Below, piece by piece: positions 411 through 63,156 of a stretch of 64,000 bases of DNA (position 1 is the stretch's first letter; every line of letters starts with the position of its first letter). The position numbers and the translations under genes are program-made. The stretch lies in the NCBI GenBank assembly GCA_977020255.1, contig CDROCS010002866.1, positions 1-64,000 of the forward strand, written 5' to 3'. The DNA is from Obrimoposthia wandeli (lineage: Eukaryota). The notes under the pieces were generated by a model that saw only the letters and a list, made by a program, of their open reading frames with translations, was not told the origin of the DNA and made no database searches.

Positions 411-755
411 GGTGACACATGATCTTCATAAAATAAAGTAACGCACAACGGTTAATTTGAGCGTCCGCTAAGGGATTGAACTAGCAGACGCCATGATATC
501 TATTGGGCATGCCTTAAAAAATTAGCAGGGCTTGCCGAGGGTTGCATAACTTATCAACAGGAATGGGAACGGAGCAACTAAATATATGTCAATGCTGATG
601 TCTTTTAGATCAAATTCAAACAAAAATTAACTGCTTTTAAGAAATTTCATTAGCAATACTGCTTTCGCAGCATCAAGAAAGACTATTACATGACAGTAAA
701 AGAGCGCACATATACATCCTTTAAATACTAGGAGCAAAGCTAACTGTTACTGTTC

Positions 756-50460: not shown

Positions 50461-50706
50461 GCATACCCTTTACAAAACAACAAAATCACTATTAAAAACA
50501 AACTAAACATTGCATAAATATGCCGCTAATCGGCAAAAAAACCAATGATACCTGTTCATAACAAATTGAGCATCTTTATTTTTTGTCACAAAGCTCCCTT
50601 TATTCAGGATGATCGTCACGCTAATTAATTGTATTTGCTAAAGTGTCATTTTTGCGGTAATGACATTATTTAGCGCTACTGTAATGGCACTATGTTCAAC
50701 GATGAT

Positions 50707-50858
50707 CATTGGTGGCCCGTTTACTTGCTGTTGCTCTTTAATTCATTGATTTTACGTTAAAGATAATTATCAATTCACTGAAAAATATCGATTTCTGTAT
50801 AGCTAGAAACCACAAATCAATGAGTTAGAGGGATTACATTTTTAGCCGAGTTGTAATG
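50707..50858 (+). mobile_element. MITE copy 1 (degenerate)
   Basis: Aligns by eye with 58355-58521 at both ends; degenerate 9-bp flanking repeat AACGATGAT/AACAATGGT. Confidence 0.65.
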
Positions 50859-50905: not shown

Positions 50906-51334
50906 TTGAGTCAAAAACACGGGTTTTATTTAGAAGATTTAGAAATTGGCATGTCTGATAGTTTAGAAAAAACCATCTCAGCTGCTGATGTCGATACATT
51001 TGCAGCATTATCAGGTGACAACAATCCTATACACTTAGATGATGAATATGCTCAATCAACCGCTTTTGGTCAACGTATTGTACATGGTATGTTTAGCGCC
51101 GCGCTAATCTCTGCGGTCGCAGGCACCAAACTACCAGGAGCTGGGGGCGTGTATTTTTCTCAAGAATTGAAATTTCGTAAACCGGTATTCATTGACGACA
51201 CGGTGATCGCAACATTAACCATCACTGATATCAACCAGCGCAGAGGCCGTGTAACAATGGATACGCAGGTGCATGTAAAAGGGGTATTGGTTGTATCCGG
51301 GGAAGCTGTTTACGGTGTCGATAAACGCCCATAA
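50906..51334 (+). CDS. MaoC family dehydratase (R-specific enoyl-CoA hydratase)
   Basis: FAALSGDNNPIHLD, IVHGM, PGAG. Confidence 0.92.
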   Translation: MSQKHGFYLEDLEIGMSDSLEKTISAADVDTFAALSGDNNPIHLDDEYAQSTAFGQRIVHGMFSAALISAVAGTKLPGAGGVYFSQELKFRKPVFIDDTVIATLTITDINQRRGRVTMDTQVHVKGVLVVSGEAVYGVDKRP

Positions 51335-51648
51335 AAACTTTTTAAATAGTTAAAATAAAATAATTTGAAATCAAATGGTTACACCTATTTTCGGTTGGCC
51401 ATTTTCAAGCATGCAATATATATGCAAAACCCTTCCGTAATATTAGATACTAATTTACTCTTATTTTTCGTGATTTAGCCTTCCTTATCATGTTAAACCA
51501 TTGTTGAAAAAAATTTATTTTAAAAGGAAATTTAATCAATATGTTTATCAATCCCTCTGTTTTTGTTCTATCTATTTTCATCGCCACTTCTGTAATTGCT
51601 GACGGCAACACAACATACTAATTTTTCAACAAAGCTAAATAATTTATT

Positions 51649-51846
51649 GTGATGCTTTTGGATAGCAAGAATAATGTGATCACACCTGCTGGCTTTACGT
51701 CTAAAACGCATGTTAAACGGAGCAAGCGCATGTCATCCCTGCTCAAAATTTTGGCAAATCTTTTAAAGAATGGCGCGAAGGTCATCCTGAACGTACCAAC
51801 AAAAAAGGATAATCGTTTAAGGGCCGTAGATGCGCTAGCAAGATGA
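51649..51846 (+). CDS. Hypothetical small basic protein
   Basis: Overlaps the next ORF (ATGA); islet context. Confidence 0.35.
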   Translation: MMLLDSKNNVITPAGFTSKTHVKRSKRMSSLLKILANLLKNGAKVILNVPTKKDNRLRAVDALAR

Positions 51847-52040
51847 ATACTGATTACCGCTACATGCAAGCTGACATGTTCAAACGTTACGCGGCTATCC
51901 ATAGAGTAAAACCGCAGCCACACTTACAGGCTACTTCTACTCTAGTGAAGTGTTTAGATATTCTAGGCATTGGTAATCCTCGAATTTTAGACATAAAAAA
52001 GCCCAGCTCGAAGGCTAGGCTATCGTGTAAATATAAGTAA
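51843..52040 (+). CDS. Hypothetical small protein
   Basis: ATGA coupling; the 3' end overlaps a minus-strand terminator. Confidence 0.3.
   Translation: MNTDYRYMQADMFKRYAAIHRVKPQPHLQATSTLVKCLDILGIGNPRILDIKKPSSKARLSCKYK
51995..52021 (-). terminator. Rho-independent terminator (minus strand)
   Basis: AGCCTAGC-CTTCGA-GCTGGGCT-TTTTT. Confidence 0.7.
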
Positions 52041-52101
52041 TACGACTAAATAAGAATTTTTCGTATACTATCTGTATACAATTAAGTATAAACTTTTATT
52101 T

Positions 52102-52302
52102 ATGAATAACTTAAATAGTAAAGTATATACTGATAACGTCACAAAAAAACAAGCTGTAGATAAACTGGTTGAACATTACCGCTCTACAAATGAAACCATC
52201 ACTAAGGAAGGAATATTCGAGATCTATAATTGTATACTCGACGACATAGAGGTCGCTGGGTCGCTTCCCTTTTATCTAAATGACTCAACTGGAACTTCTT
52301 GA
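52102..52302 (+). CDS. Hypothetical small acidic protein
   Basis: 66-aa ORF with plausible composition. Confidence 0.45.
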   Translation: MNNLNSKVYTDNVTKKQAVDKLVEHYRSTNETITKEGIFEIYNCILDDIEVAGSLPFYLNDSTGTS

Positions 52303-52334
52303 TTGAATACCAAAGGCTTGCTGCCATTCGGCAT

Positions 52335-52451
52335 AAAAAAGCCCCACTTTATTAGCGAGGCTTAATCTGTTAAAAAATGGCAATATATAATTGAGGGTTA
52401 ATTGTGATGGAAACCCCATCACTTACAAGAAACAACTGTATTTATTAAAGG
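52335..52451 (-). repeat. Copy A of a ~115-bp promoter/short-RNA/terminator module
   Basis: Direct repeat of 53733-53851. Confidence 0.85.
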
Positions 52452-53416
52452 GCTCTTCTTTGTTCTCGCTCGATATGTTCCTTCTTGTTAATTTTACTAT
52501 AAAACGAAGATCTGCTCATAAGCACATCTCTTGGCGCTCCATCTTCAGCCCAGAAAGCTTCTGTAATATATTGTCTTGACCATCTACCGTTCTCTTCTTC
52601 TTTAAATGTAGCACTCTGGACAAATCGCCCGTTTCTAGCATGGTACTCAGCCTTGAGCTCTATTTCCCCTGAATGCGAACCCGCTAGAAATTTCTTGTGG
52701 TTTTCAAAAGAACCAATCAAAACTCCAAGTTCTGATGTTTCTACATCCTCAAAGCCGACGATATTTCTAATCGACACTTTTACATCATACAAAGGATTAT
52801 ATCCTTCAATTCTATAATAGTATTCAACAGCGCCAGTAACAGCATCTATTTGCAAATCAACTAATGGGTATGACCGCCCTCCTGTAATCTGACCAATTAT
52901 TTTCTTCCTTTCTTCTTCTTGTGCTTCACTACCATGCTGGTGCGACAAAGCATTCAAAAAAAGACCAATTATCGCAAGACCTGTAACAGATTCAAACCCG
53001 ACAACGAATTTTGCCCATCCACTTACTGGTGAGATATCCCCATACCCAAGGGTAGTGATAGTAACGGCGCTAAAATACAGCCGGTCCCCAATGACTCCCC
53101 ACTTTAAGCTATCCCATGTCAAACGGTCCCAGGTCAAAACCTCCCAATTAAAACTACTGAACTCAAAGTTTTTCCAATTTATGGCTTCCCATGGAAAAAA
53201 ATCGCCTACATTTTCTAATTCAATTCCAGGGATAGCGAATAAAAACGAATACAAAATAACAGCCGATACGAACCATAATGCATACACTTGGGGGAGTTGA
53301 TTCGTCACAGCCTTACTTTCATCAAAATCTAACGAATCAATACCTTCCTCTGGATTGAAATCATATCTCTTAGTAGGCCTTGTTTTTTGCTTATTGAAGT
53401 TTAGATTGCTGACCAT
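52445..53416 (-). CDS. Two-TM potassium channel (Ion_trans_2) domain protein
   Basis: YFSAVTITTLGYGDISP pore/selectivity filter flanked by TM helices. Confidence 0.85.
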   Translation of the reverse strand: MVSNLNFNKQKTRPTKRYDFNPEEGIDSLDFDESKAVTNQLPQVYALWFVSAVILYSFLFAIPGIELENVGDFFPWEAINWKNFEFSSFNWEVLTWDRLTWDSLKWGVIGDRLYFSAVTITTLGYGDISPVSGWAKFVVGFESVTGLAIIGLFLNALSHQHGSEAQEEERKKIIGQITGGRSYPLVDLQIDAVTGAVEYYYRIEGYNPLYDVKVSIRNIVGFEDVETSELGVLIGSFENHKKFLAGSHSGEIELKAEYHARNGRFVQSATFKEEENGRWSRQYITEAFWAEDGAPRDVLMSRSSFYSKINKKEHIEREQRRAL

Positions 53417-53732
53417 GTTTTATACTCAGAAAAAGGCTATTGTCTCTTAAGACACTAACAAATAGAATTATTTTTTACGCAAGCTGTAGCTGTTCAATTT
53501 ATTCAAGAGGGTCTTTGTGCGCTAGCTTTTCGATCAGTTTCTTCAAGCCCATGCTTTTGTTATGTCTGAAAACAGCCTTAGATCCTTCCAAATACTCAGC
53601 TATTTAAAAATCAGAATGCGCTCTCTTATAACAAAATTTAAATACGTCCCAGCCAAAAACGCAAACAACTTCTTATCCTCAAACTTGGCAAACAACATCT
53701 TCATCAACTCAAAATAATAATGATTCATCCAC

Positions 53733-53851
53733 AAAAAAGCCTCGCTTTATTGGCGAGGCTTAATCTGTTACAAATATGGCAATATATAATTGAGGGTTAA
53801 TTGTAATAGTGTTTTTCTATCACTTGCAAGGATAGCTGTATTTATTATCAG
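53733..53851 (-). ncRNA. Copy B: candidate ~60-nt sRNA with sigma70 promoter, terminator and SOS-like box
   Basis: TTGCAA-N18-TACAAT, then AGCCTCGC-CAATAAA-GCGAGGCT-TTTTT; CTGTATTTATTATCAG at 53836-53851. Confidence 0.5.
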
Positions 53852-53939
53852 GATGATTATTTATATTCTATATTTAGATAAGCAATAACACTCTAGCAAG
53901 ATTAGCCACTATTGAAAACAAAACTACTGAGCACACATT

Positions 53940-54710
53940 TTAACACTCTTCAAATTCAATTTTAAACGAAACACTACTTCTTTTCCCTCTCCAAAGCTTA
54001 ACATTTGGGTTGCAATCTTGCAGTATTGAACAGATTATTTGAATATCATCTTTCTTCATCTCAGATCCAAAATATACTCCAGTCAAATCTTCTCGTTTAT
54101 AAACACACTTCTTTCCTGCTTCTTCATGGAAAAGCCTCCACTCACTTTCATACTCCCAAGATTTCGACTTTGTACTGAAAAGTTTAGTAACCATTTCGTC
54201 TGTGCCTGTATTCTCAATTATCGTTTGGATATCCAACACTGGTAGATTTTTATCATAGCTAACTTTACGAGCCAGACAAAAAAAGTTTGATCTGGTAGTA
54301 TCAAACTCTAAACAAAAACCTGTGTACTTTTGTCCATAATGCGCCCACATTAAAAGCTCATCATTATTTTCTGAAAAGCACGAGACACCTCTATTTAATC
54401 TAAAGTTACGTATTATTTTATTAAGAACTGTTCTCGCTAACCTAGACATTCCTAGTTTTACTTCTTTAAAAGGTTTGCCTTTAAAATCTATATGTTTAAG
54501 ACGAAAGGTTTCCACCTCTTTTTTTGTAGGAAATCTAATCCCAGCATTTAATGCACAATCATATGGATCATTAAAAGCTTCTGGTGACCCAAAATAAATG
54601 ATTTGTTTTTTTAGATTGGATAATGCTTGTTCCGAATAAGGTTCATATTTATATAGTTTATTTGGACGATTCAAGGTAACACCTTTTGTAAGGGTTATTC
54701 GATTAAACAA
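53940..54710 (-). CDS. DUF2971 domain protein
   Basis: LYKY, FNDPYDC, SCFSE...LMWAHYG...GFCLEF, TKS..WEYESEWR. Confidence 0.85.
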   Translation of the reverse strand: MFNRITLTKGVTLNRPNKLYKYEPYSEQALSNLKKQIIYFGSPEAFNDPYDCALNAGIRFPTKKEVETFRLKHIDFKGKPFKEVKLGMSRLARTVLNKIIRNFRLNRGVSCFSENNDELLMWAHYGQKYTGFCLEFDTTRSNFFCLARKVSYDKNLPVLDIQTIIENTGTDEMVTKLFSTKSKSWEYESEWRLFHEEAGKKCVYKREDLTGVYFGSEMKKDDIQIICSILQDCNPNVKLWRGKRSSVSFKIEFEEC

Positions 54711-58354: not shown

Positions 58355-58521
58355 CATAGCTGTCCGGTTAAAAAGTGTAAGCTCTTTACCCATTGACTAC
58401 TTGTGGTATAATCTTTGCTAATCATAGGTAATTGGATTTTTTTAAGTAACGTATCCAGTTGTGGTTATCAACTCACTCATCAGAGCTTACAGAACAACAA
58501 AAATTAAACCGGACACTAATG
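58355..58521 (-). mobile_element. MITE copy 2 (complete, 167 bp)
   Basis: TIRs CATAGCTGTCCGGTT / CATTAGTGTCCGGTT; perfect 9-bp TSD ACCCAGTGT (58346-58354, 58522-58530). Confidence 0.85.
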
Positions 58522-58529
58522 ACCCAGTG

Positions 58530-60170: not shown

Positions 60171-60613
60171 CTGAGCTTTGAATTTCAGAACTTGCAGAAG
60201 AACTTGCATTTACTAAAATGGCAATAAGAAATGGCGATCTTCAATTACTTGCAGCTGCAGCTTGCAACATAACACGGCAGCTAGTTGTAATTTTTTCATT
60301 ACTAATCCTTATAATGATTATATTCTTTTACTTATCATGCTTCTTTGAAAACGAAACAGAACAATTAGTTTATAACAAATGATAATCATTATATTTAATT
60401 GTTTTGTATTAATGTGATCTGAATCAATATTTTGCAAATTTTAAATTAAAGCAACCCTCTCCTAAATCATATACTTTTACTTAAATGGGACTCAGTAGTA
60501 ACTTAATCAAACAATAAAATGAAGATATTTTAGAAAGCATAATAAAGCTAAAAGCAATATCACCAAATGAGCTCCACGCTATTGCCTACACGATGGAGCT
60601 GAGCTAATACTTA

Positions 60614-62843: not shown

Positions 62844-63051
62844 TTGTTTCTCATTGCGTTAAATGCTGATGTGAACTAATAGCCAATCTGGTTTAGCTAA
62901 AAGAGAGGGAAAGGTAGAGAATATAGCTAACTTTAGTTTTTTTGCAATGATTAGTGATAGCTAAGGAACGTGTGATCAAGCACCTTAGTTATCCACGGAG
63001 AAAGTTTAGGGGCTTAATCGCGTGCTCCCTGACATTTAAGACAGATAAACT

Positions 63052-63156
63052 CATTAGTGTCCGGTTTAATTCTGTTGTTCATTAATTCATTGATTTCACG
63101 TTAATCACAAGTATTATTTGGCTAATAAAACACTATGCCATCAATGAGTAAAGAGC
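63052..63156 (+). mobile_element. MITE copy 3 (right end missing)
   Basis: Starts CATTAGTGTCCGGTTTAAT, ends TCAATGAGTAAAGAGC; perfect 10-bp flanking repeat CAGATAAACT (63042-63051, 63157-63166). Confidence 0.75.

What the first reader, a model, noticed from the sequence alone, without database searches (positions are those of the whole stretch)
52335..53851. Duplicated ~115-bp promoter-sRNA-terminator module with SOS-like box, each copy following an accessory gene
Copies 52335-52451 and 53733-53851 share an identical 24-nt core (ATGGCAATATATAATTGAGGGTTA; AATTGT continues the match) and a terminator hairpin. The promoter spacers differ in sequence but both keep a dyad (GTGATGG/CCATCAC; GTGATAG/CTATTAC). 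Both carry CTGTATTTATTA(TCAG/AAGG), a LexA-like box. On the minus strand this predicts a ~60-nt RNA. Copy A begins exactly at the stop codon of the K+-channel gene, giving a gene-repeat-gene-repeat layout like a non-integron cassette array. Alternatives are an istR/tisB-like type I TA antitoxin, a phage late-promoter/terminator unit, or recombination sites that capture defence genes. I do not recognise the RNA.
Basis: partly seen in the sequence, partly recalled or inferred. Interest (0 to 1): 0.7.

Follow-up and report, generated by a model that had tools for sequence, protein, structure and literature searches.

The report
Phage late-gene switch, duplicated in remnant
The repeated 115-bp unit is most likely the control switch that a family of marine temperate phages places just ahead of its cell-bursting genes: a DNA-damage-sensing site, a promoter and an early stop signal. 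The two copies here lie in a decayed prophage, so this is an interesting variant of a known kind of switch, not a new class of RNA gene.

Summary
Copies at 52332-52451 and 53730-53851 are real repeats, with 0 expected by chance. On the minus strand each has a sigma-70 promoter, about 60 transcribed bases and a strong intrinsic terminator. The contig is bacterial (Oceanospirillaceae/Nitrincolaceae) inside a 1.35-Gb eukaryote assembly.

A covariance model found about 35 further copies in relatives and metagenomes. The genomic context decides the reading:
- In an intact-looking prophage (G187) and on many metagenome contigs the unit sits about 20 nt upstream of a lysis cassette.
- Upstream of it lies a conserved 159-aa regulator with a sigma-region-4-like fold, as phage 21 Q has, followed by 1-3 variable genes that are often a K+-channel homologue.

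The window has this same order in decayed form: truncated regulator, K+ channel, copy A, terminator, stump of an M15 endolysin gene.

The LexA box is genuine. CTG-N10-CAG lies 6-8 nt upstream of the -35 element in 10 of 19 full copies, and it matches this clade's own lexA operators.

My best reading is a lambda PR'-tR' / Pseudomonas PalpB-like late promoter that needs processive antitermination, with LexA gating added.

A trans-acting role for the short RNA remains possible. No RNA data exist. Type I toxin-antitoxin and attC-like recombination-site readings are rejected.

The parts
53730..53862 (-). Module copy B, complete. LexA box CTGATAATAAATACAG (53851-53836); -35 TTGCAA and -10 TACAAT (53829-53800); spacer dyad GTGATAG/CTATTAC; conserved start of the transcript TCAATTATATATTGCCA; terminator at 53761-53737.
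   Evidence: (89.8 bits)
52332..52463 (-). Module copy A. It has the same parts as B, but the left half of the LexA box is replaced by the 3' end of the K+-channel gene. Promoter TTGTAA / CACAAT with dyad GTGATGG/CCATCAC; terminator at 52363-52339.
   Evidence: (85.7 bits)
52445..53416 (-). 323-aa Ion_trans_2 (K+-channel-like) gene. It is homologous to the gene that sits directly upstream of the module on three metagenome phage contigs.
   Evidence: 29-32% identity over about 270 aa, E 1e-27 to 1e-39
53478..53737 (-). Remnant of the 159-aa candidate late regulator (f159). Only residues about 76-159 remain, with a frameshift near 53636. The remnant starts at the end of copy B's terminator.
   Evidence: (tblastn E 3e-10)
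52000..52021 (-). Intrinsic terminator T1 (AGCCTAGCCTTCGAGCTGGGCT + T-run). It lies directly upstream of the endolysin stump. The same terminator precedes M15 endolysin genes at three other loci.
51908..51970 (-). Stump (first 21 codons) of a Peptidase_M15_3-type phage endolysin gene. This is 'repeat X', shared with contig position 214.6 kb and with contig C2814.
53940..54710 (-). 256-aa DUF2971 protein, a PADLOC PDC-S31 candidate defence protein. It is the gene that copy B follows.
   Evidence: E 6.6e-57

Best explanation
The module is the late-gene control region of a family of temperate phages of Oceanospirillaceae/Nitrincolaceae bacteria. The window holds two copies of it inside a decayed prophage.

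Anatomy on the minus strand (shown):
- A LexA operator 6-8 nt upstream of the -35 element.
- A sigma-70 promoter, TTGCAA-17-(C/T)ACAAT.
- An inverted repeat, GTGA-N11-13-TCAC, that fills the promoter spacer and overlaps the -10 element.
- A near-invariant start of the transcript, TCAATTATATATATTGCCA, which contains the -10-like hexamer TATATT.
- A strong intrinsic terminator about 40-65 nt after the start.
- In intact relatives, the start codon of the lysis cassette about 20 nt further on.

Mechanism (inferred by analogy with lambda/21 PR'-QBE-tR' and Pseudomonas PalpB-tB):
- In a lysogen, LexA and the terminator keep the lysis and late genes silent.
- After DNA damage the promoter fires, but it yields only a short RNA of about 60 nt.
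- A phage factor then binds the spacer element while RNA polymerase waits at a sigma-dependent pause on the TATATT element.
- That factor makes the polymerase terminator-resistant, so it reads into the cargo, lysis and structural genes.
- The best candidate for the factor is the 159-aa sigma-region-4-like protein encoded just upstream.

Origin of the tandem copies (inferred): the duplicated unit with variable genes between copies arises by recombination at this conserved sequence. It marks the phage's cargo slot.
For: (1) Context.
- In the G187 prophage the module lies between the early genes (SSB and replication genes) and the late genes. The late genes are a putative endolysin, a holin-like gene, a lipoprotein, HNH, terminase, portal and capsid.
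- On metagenome contigs L160, L196 and L168 the putative endolysin gene starts about 20 nt after the terminator. L205, L152 and L185 have the same order.
- In G190, and at copies A and C of the window's own genome, an M15 endolysin gene or its remnant lies downstream behind a second terminator, T1. There is no room for a promoter between T1 and the gene.

(2) The candidate regulator f159 lies 0.1-3.5 kb upstream of the module at six loci: G187, L168, L148, L207, L190 and the window.
- Its model has an N-terminal helix, a disordered loop and a sigma-region-4-like helix-turn-helix (Z 6-7.3, rmsd about 2 A).
- Phage 21 Q (6jnx_P) appears at rank 17, Z 6.0.
- 21Q is described as sigma-R4-like with an RseA-like N-terminal helix (PMC6606751).

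(3) The cis elements match the published rule: a binding element between -35 and -10, plus a -10-like element in the early transcript (PMC6606751, PMC9371919).
- The spacer arms covary: 4 of 7 pairs change on both sides.
- The early-transcript core is among the most conserved segments (0.86).

(4) LexA box.
- 10 of 19 full copies have CTG-N10-CAG at a fixed distance from the -35 element. Five more have CTG-N10-CAT.
- Such sites are rare: 2 in the 64-kb window.
- They match the operators at this clade's lexA genes, one of which also lies 8 nt upstream of its -35 element.
- LexA repression of a phage late promoter has precedent in GIL01 P3 (PMC6182141).

(5) In all 7 full copies with readable flanks, the next gene downstream is on the same strand as the module.
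Against: - No transcript, pause or read-through has been observed. No RNA run holds this DNA.
- f159 has no sequence match to any Q family in Pfam, the PDB or GenBank phages. The structural match to 21Q is weak (rmsd 7.7 A), and sigma-R4-like folds are common, so f159 could be an activator or a small sigma factor.
- The spacer element is an inverted repeat. The QBE of phage 21 is a direct repeat and the AlpA site is a single hexamer. A repressor operator would explain the inverted repeat equally well.
- A LexA box centred near -50 is an unusual place for repression.
- Some copies keep the transcribed part but have a different upstream sequence (G001 two copies, G187:C1, G187:C23, L152:1761). 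Conservation of the RNA part alone is what a trans-acting sRNA predicts.
- Copies in G004, G005 and L148 are followed by a chemoreceptor gene, not by lysis genes.
Confidence: 0.62

Rival explanations
1. The module is an SOS-induced, Hfq-type trans-acting small RNA gene family. It has its own promoter, a single-stranded 5' seed (UCAAUUAUAUAUAUUGCCA) and a Rho-independent terminator. Phages and prophage remnants carry it, and it regulates host or phage mRNAs by base pairing. This can coexist with the late-promoter reading, as the Stx-phage PR' short transcript StxS does.
For: - The 5' 35 nt are predicted unpaired and are followed by a stable hairpin and a U tail.
- The seed-like block is conserved in copies whose promoter and terminator sequences differ: G187:C1, G187:C23 and the two G001 copies.
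- There are several copies per genome.
- There is precedent: StxS is the terminated PR' transcript and acts as an sRNA (PMC7547250).
Against: - It matches no Rfam family.
- The conserved block is almost pure A/U, which makes a weak pairing seed but a good -10-like DNA element.
- A duplex scan of three phage contigs gave no outstanding or recurrent target.
- Its fixed position directly before lysis genes and after f159 is not explained by a trans-acting role alone.
- No RNA data exist.
Confidence: 0.25
2. The module is an activator- or repressor-controlled late promoter without antitermination. Its terminator only insulates the late operon from upstream transcription. Late genes would then be transcribed by leaky read-through, or from the module when f159 acts as an activator or small sigma factor.
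For: - The f159 fold is closest to ECF sigma region 4, and one source names a homologue 'specialized sigma subunit'.
- Weak Pfam hints point to phage late-activator-like HTH families: DUF1492 and UPF0122.
- The inverted repeat overlapping the -10 element looks like a classical operator.
Against: - The terminator lies downstream of the promoter and upstream of the genes. Any transcript from this promoter must pass a 9-bp GC-rich hairpin followed by a T-run of about six (T6 in most copies).
- A second terminator, T1, directly precedes the M15 genes. An activator alone does not solve either obstacle.
- The promoter already has near-consensus sigma-70 hexamers.
Confidence: 0.1
3. The module is a recombination or attachment site that captures genes. 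It would be attC-like, or the 3' part of a host sRNA gene used as a phage att site. Alternatively it is a type I toxin-antitoxin locus.
For: - Tandem gene-module-gene-module arrays occur in the window and on five metagenome contigs.
- Partial copies exist that keep only the 3' part.
- Earlier notes of this scan report an integron-type array about 25 kb beyond the window's end on this contig.
Against: - The module has phage genes on both sides, in one orientation, on many contigs. It is therefore internal to the phage, not an end.
- The single strand does not fold into one long imperfect hairpin as attC does. Only the terminator hairpin is stable.
- No integrase lies beside it in the stretches read.
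- The opposite strand encodes only a 5-codon frame, and no small hydrophobic reading frame is present.
Confidence: 0.03

Closest known systems
Lambdoid phage late control region: PR' promoter with Q-binding element, sigma-dependent pause element and terminator tR' (phages lambda, 21, 82; Stx phages)
   Same: - A sigma-70 promoter lies directly before the lysis and late genes.
- A protein-binding element sits between the -35 and -10 elements.
- A -10-like hexamer lies in the first 15 transcribed bases.
- A short terminated transcript is made.
- A small regulator gene lies just upstream, with a sigma-R4-like helix-turn-helix as in 21Q.
- Cargo genes sit around the unit, as stx does downstream of PR'.
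   Different: - A LexA operator is built into the unit; PR' is constitutive.
- The spacer element is an inverted repeat, not a direct repeat or single site.
- The terminated RNA is only about 60 nt.
- One to three cargo genes separate the regulator from the promoter.
- The candidate regulator has no sequence similarity to any Q family.
- The unit is often duplicated in tandem.
Pseudomonas aeruginosa alpR-alpA / PalpB-tB programmed-lysis switch (AlpA antiterminator)
   Same: - It is a DNA-damage-triggered lysis pathway.
- A binding element lies between the -35 and -10 elements.
[quoted passage not shown]
- An intrinsic terminator precedes the lysis genes.
- The antiterminator has a 21Q-like fold without sequence similarity to 21Q (PMC9371919).
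   Different: - There, DNA damage acts through cleavage of the repressor AlpR, which controls alpA.
- Here a canonical LexA box sits on the terminated promoter itself.
- Neither AlpA nor AlpR was sought here. No homologue turned up among the proteins scanned.
Bacillus phage GIL01 late promoter P3 (LexA-gp7 repression, gp6 activation)
   Same: Host LexA binds boxes in a phage late promoter and holds back the lysis and structural genes until DNA damage. A small phage protein is needed in addition (PMC6182141).
   Different: - GIL01 is a Gram-positive tectivirus.
- Its boxes lie within the promoter.
- Control is by activation, not terminator read-through.
- No terminated leader RNA is described.
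StxS, the sRNA made from the terminated PR' transcript of Stx phages
   Same: A short RNA arises as a by-product of a late promoter that is terminated at once. It could have a trans-acting role of its own (PMC7547250).
   Different: There is no sequence or Rfam similarity. No Hfq binding, target or even transcript has been shown here.

Membership tests
Q/AlpA-type late promoter-terminator (processive antitermination) unit | A sigma-70 promoter lies immediately upstream of the phage late or lysis genes. | tested here: met
   Promoter hexamers are called by the scan tool and conserved in 19 copies. A putative endolysin gene starts about 20 nt after the unit in L160, L196 and L168. In the G187 prophage the unit lies upstream of the lysis, terminase and head genes.
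Q/AlpA-type late promoter-terminator (processive antitermination) unit | An intrinsic terminator lies between the promoter and the late genes. | tested here: met
   The hairpin has 9-10 bp and is followed by a T-run. Folding gives z = -2.6 to -4.6. The stem pairs in 91% of cells, with compensatory changes.
Q/AlpA-type late promoter-terminator (processive antitermination) unit | A -10-like element in the early transcribed region causes a sigma-dependent pause. | tested here: inconclusive
   TATATT lies about 8-15 nt after the predicted start, inside the near-invariant block TCAATTATATATATTGCCA. The start site and the pause are inferred, not measured.
Q/AlpA-type late promoter-terminator (processive antitermination) unit | A factor-binding element lies between the -35 and -10 elements. 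| tested here: inconclusive
   A conserved inverted repeat, GTGA-N11-13-TCAC, fills the spacer and has covarying inner bases. What binds it is unknown. Known Q and AlpA sites are not inverted repeats.
Q/AlpA-type late promoter-terminator (processive antitermination) unit | An antiterminator gene (Q or AlpA family) is encoded nearby. | tested here: inconclusive
   f159 lies upstream at six loci. Its fold is sigma-R4-like, with 21Q at Z 6.0 and rmsd 7.7 A. There is no Pfam Q hit and no PDB sequence hit.
Q/AlpA-type late promoter-terminator (processive antitermination) unit | Factor-dependent read-through of the terminator. | not testable with these tools
   This needs in vitro transcription or reporter assays.
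LexA (SOS) operator of Gammaproteobacteria | A 16-bp palindrome, CTGT-N8-ACAG, matching the organism's own SOS boxes. | tested here: met
   Copy B reads CTGTATTTATTATCAG. Ten of 19 copies have CTG-N10-CAG. The clade's lexA promoters carry CTGTATAAATAAACAG and CTGGATATATAGACAG. The umuDC control locus carries CTGTATATATGTACAG.
LexA (SOS) operator of Gammaproteobacteria | LexA binding and damage-dependent derepression. | not testable with these tools
   No RNA data exist. A gel-shift or reporter assay is needed. The box lies 6-8 nt upstream of the -35 element, as the distal box of the lexA promoter does.
Known bacterial sRNA families (Rfam) | A match to a curated covariance model. | tested here: not met
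   There were 0 matches at gathering score in the window. Only sub-threshold chance-level hits appeared in 51300-54000.
Type I toxin-antitoxin (tisB/istR-like) | A small hydrophobic toxin reading frame overlapped by, or next to, the antisense RNA. | tested here: not met
   The opposite strand holds only a 5-codon frame. The neighbouring reading frames are the K+ channel, the f159 remnant and a hydrophilic 66-aa frame.
Integron attC / gene cassette | An imperfect palindrome spans the whole site, folding as one hairpin with R''/L''-L'/R' boxes, next to an intI platform. | tested here: not met
   The single-strand fold is dominated by the terminator hairpin only. The unit lies inside phage gene orders. 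No integrase was seen in the stretches read.

The most novel reading that the evidence does not exclude
The unit could be a dual-purpose, SOS-gated late switch unknown in cultured phages. LexA would sit directly on a PR'-like promoter. The antiterminator would be a new sigma-R4-like family, f159, which has no hit in 50,697 GenBank phages. The short terminated transcript would double as a trans-acting sRNA, kept even where the phage has decayed. The conserved unit would also act as the recombination joint through which cargo is swapped in tandem arrays. Such cargo includes phage K+ channels and candidate defence genes like PDC-S31.
Probability: 0.2. Interest if true: 0.65.

Novelty: new variant of a known kind. 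Interest (0 to 1): 0.45.

Why it matters
If the reading is right, it extends Q/AlpA-type antitermination to uncultured marine Oceanospirillales phages, including relatives of invertebrate symbionts. It would do so with a regulator family that sequence searches cannot link to Q.

It also shows host LexA wired directly onto the late promoter. That would be a second safety catch on lysis, so far documented mainly for the unrelated phage GIL01.

It gives a searchable DNA signature, covariance model R1, for finding late regions and cargo slots in these phages.

It flags a conserved phage K+-channel gene placed next to the lysis cassette.

For the genome at hand, it explains a puzzling repeat as prophage debris, not as a new RNA gene or cassette system.

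Tried and rejected
- Rfam at gathering score and at E-value threshold gave no family.
- An exact-pattern scan of 185,579 species genomes gave 0 hits. An IMG/VR scan gave 4 chance hits, none confirmed by the model. blastn of the module against GenBank phages gave no match.
- Synteny with the closest relative (G001; ndh protein 95% identical, DNA about 90%) ends at window position 60570, so the locus could not be compared directly.
- Only one sequencing run holds this DNA, and it is not on record as RNA. Laying it showed extra module variants in the sample. It also showed a 52020->53728 joint that matches the paralogous T1+T2 arrangement on contig C2814, so it does not indicate an excision.
- The Q search was negative by sequence. 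Pfam and PHROGs on the four reading frames upstream of the module in G187 gave no Q family. PDB sequence and profile searches were blank.
- The RNAduplex target scan found only the self-antisense site.
- The CRP-site idea for GTGA...TCAC was dropped because the spacing is 11-13 nt, not 6. The P2 Ogr-type TGT-N12-ACA idea was dropped because the symmetry is CTG/CAG.
- attC-like folding is not seen.
Full report
**What is there.**
- The window is a bacterial contig of about 38% G+C (C2866, 548 kb) inside a 1.35-Gb eukaryote assembly.
- Its ndh gene is 95% identical at protein level to an Oceanospirillaceae MAG. It is 73-79% identical to Nitrincolaceae MAGs and Osedax symbiont Rs2.
The 29-nt core occurs exactly twice, against 0 expected. 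The copies align over about 118 nt at 82% identity.
- On the minus strand, the scan tool calls TTGCAA-18-TACAAT for copy B. It calls intrinsic terminators at 53761-53737 and 52363-52339, plus a third terminator, T1, at 52021-52000.
- The transcribed stretch folds as about 35 unpaired A/U-rich bases followed by a 9-bp hairpin and a U tail.
- No Rfam family matches.

**More copies.**
- The same contig has a third copy at 215384-215482. A diverged fourth copy lies on contig C2814.
- BLAST, and then a covariance model (R1), found copies in 8 of 151 genomes of the same family. G187 has three, G001 two and G005 two. G190, G004 and G185 have one each. G002 and G007 give borderline hits at E 0.005-0.009.
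- A pattern scan of metagenome contigs followed by the model gave 23 further hits on 18 contigs.
- No RNA run holds this DNA, so expression cannot be judged. The one DNA run shows that the sample holds further module variants.

**Context decides the reading.**
- In G187 contig C34 the module lies inside an intact-looking prophage.
  - Upstream are SSB, replication genes and other early genes.
  - Downstream are a 483-aa gene and a 198-aa putative endolysin (phrog_3000; phrog_33083 'endolysin', E 3e-19). Then follow a holin-like gene, a lipoprotein, HNH, small and large terminase, portal, protease and capsid.
- On metagenome contigs the same putative endolysin gene starts about 20 nt after the module's terminator (L160, L196, L168). 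L205, L152 and L185 have the same order.
- The recurrent gene order upstream is SSB, a 149-aa gene, a zinc-finger gene, a 159-aa gene (f159), then 1-3 variable genes, then the module.
- The gene directly before the module is an Ion_trans_2 channel homologue in L148, L168 and L207, as it is in the window. These are 29-40% identical over about 270 residues.

**The window holds this architecture in decayed form.** Reading the minus strand:
- a DUF2971 / PDC-S31 gene;
- copy B;
- the C-terminal half of f159, frameshifted, beginning at the end of B's terminator (53737-53478);
- the K+-channel gene;
- copy A;
- a 66-aa frame on the other strand;
- terminator T1;
- the first 21 codons of a Peptidase_M15_3 endolysin gene (51970-51908).

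The pair 'T1 then M15 endolysin' recurs at contig position 214.6 kb next to copy C, on contig C2814, and intact in G190. In G190 the order is module, two genes, T1, then a 126-aa M15 gene. T1 leaves no room for a promoter before the endolysin start codon.

**The cis elements.** An alignment of 19 full copies shows the following.
- *LexA-type box.*
  - It lies 6-8 nt upstream of the -35 element. It reads CTG-N10-CAG in 10 copies and CTG-N10-CAT in 5, and is degenerate in 4, including copies A and C.
  - AT-rich boxes of this form are rare: two in the whole window.
  - They match the operators at this clade's own lexA genes, CTGTATAAATAAACAG and CTGGATATATAGACAG. The second of these also lies 8 nt upstream of its -35 element.
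  - A umuDC locus serves as a positive control.
- *Spacer dyad.* The promoter spacer is filled by an inverted repeat, GTGA-N11-13-TCAC, whose inner bases covary. Examples are GTGATGG/CCATCAC, GTGATAG/CTATCAC, GTGACAAT/ATTGTCAC and ATGACAC/GCGTCAC. Four of 7 pairs change on both sides, and 0 of 500 shuffles reach the observed score. Because it lies upstream of the start site, this looks like a dimer-binding operator and not an RNA helix.
- *Start of the transcript.* The first transcribed bases, TCAATTATATATATTGCCA, are among the most conserved segments (0.86). They contain the -10-like hexamer TATATT.
- *Terminator.* The terminator stem is kept through compensatory changes.

**Mechanism.**
- Phage Q proteins need a binding element between the -35 and -10 elements of the late promoter. 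They also need a -10-like element in the early transcript that causes a sigma-dependent pause. Q then makes RNA polymerase resistant to the terminator placed before the late genes (PMC6606751).
- Pseudomonas AlpA works the same way at PalpB-tB, upstream of lysis genes, under DNA-damage control (PMC9371919).
- The module has every sequence-level element of this scheme, in the right order and place.
- The candidate factor is f159.
  - Its AlphaFold model (pLDDT 69) has an N-terminal helix, a disordered loop and a C-terminal four-helix domain.
  - That domain matches sigma region 4 at Z 6-7.3 and rmsd about 2 A. Phage 21 Q appears at Z 6.0 over 112 residues, but at rmsd 7.7 A.
  - 21Q itself is described as sigma-R4-like with an RseA-like first helix (PMC6606751).
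- The f159 assignment is suggestive only. There is no sequence link to any Q family, and f159 has no relative in 50,697 GenBank phages.
- LexA control of a phage late promoter has a precedent in GIL01 P3 (PMC6182141). The short terminated RNA could have a role of its own, as StxS does (PMC7547250).

**What stays open.**
- Copies with the transcribed part conserved but a different upstream sequence fit a trans-acting sRNA better. These are the two G001 copies, G187:C1, G187:C23 and L152:1761. One G001 copy is syntenic with the window genome's copy C.
- Copies in G004, G005 and L148 precede an orthologous chemoreceptor gene, not lysis genes.
- A duplex scan found no recurrent target.
- Tandem units with different genes between them recur on five contigs. 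I read it as recombination at the conserved unit, in the cargo slot.
- The attC and attachment-site readings fail. The unit is internal to phage genomes and does not fold like attC.
- The type I toxin-antitoxin reading fails for lack of a toxin reading frame.

**Verdict.** The LexA box and the promoter-RNA-terminator anatomy are confirmed as conserved features. The best-supported identity is a LexA-gated late-gene promoter/terminator switch of a phage family, present here as two copies in a prophage remnant. It is a new variant of a known kind of system. The antitermination step and the role of f159 are inferences.

Noticed in passing
window 52445-53416 (-); L148:8723-9739; L168:1251-2180 (-); L207:1022-1930: A K+-channel-like (Ion_trans_2) gene is a conserved but fast-diverging phage gene. 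It sits between the candidate late regulator and the lysis-gene switch. Its position next to the lysis cassette suggests a role in lysis timing or exclusion.
   Followed up: partly
window 53940-54710 (-): The DUF2971 protein matches the PADLOC candidate defence family PDC-S31 (E 6.6e-57). It sits directly upstream of module copy B.
   Followed up: partly
window 52000-52021 (-); L088:1750-1782 and 555-585 (-); L127:5210-5240: A second conserved terminator, T1 (AGCCTAGCCTTCGAGCTGGGCT + T-run), lies about 25 nt before M15 endolysin genes at four loci. There are three paralogous M15 loci in this genome, two broken by stops or frameshifts and one cut to 21 codons. G190 has T1 twice, flanking the module and its cargo.
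   Followed up: partly
L003:1660-2290 (contig about 215.5-216.2 kb): An IS200/IS605 Y1 transposase gene (142 aa) with hairpin-rich ends sits right beside module copy C. The LexA box of copy C is split by an insertion of about 16 nt.
   Followed up: no
window 50706-50760, 58492-58522, 63051-63104: A short repeat of 31-55 nt occurs in three copies (85-94% identity).
   Followed up: no
L135, L128-L131 (lexA upstream regions): The lexA promoters of this clade carry three LexA boxes with a conserved layout. The distal box lies 8 nt upstream of the -35 element.
   Followed up: partly
L142:1567-3672, L125:9940-11748, L148:10880-12777: In three different genomes or contigs the module is followed by orthologous 541-542-aa methyl-accepting chemotaxis protein genes instead of lysis genes. 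This could be a shared ancient deletion, cargo, or a domesticated use of the switch.
   Followed up: no
window 51500-54500 in run X1: The source sample holds several related strains or paralogues. Contig depth over the module is about 124 and over T1/X about 106, against about 21 for the flanks. Variant modules resembling the G190 type are present.
   Followed up: partly
G000 as a whole: The assembly holds at least nine lexA loci on different contigs, so several bacteria were co-assembled with the eukaryote.
   Followed up: no
window 51843-51900 (+): A short reading frame starting MNTDYRYMQADMF resembles the N-terminus of a 124-aa gene in G005 (L125:14268-14642). It abuts the endolysin stump and looks like another gene fragment at a rearrangement joint.
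   Followed up: no
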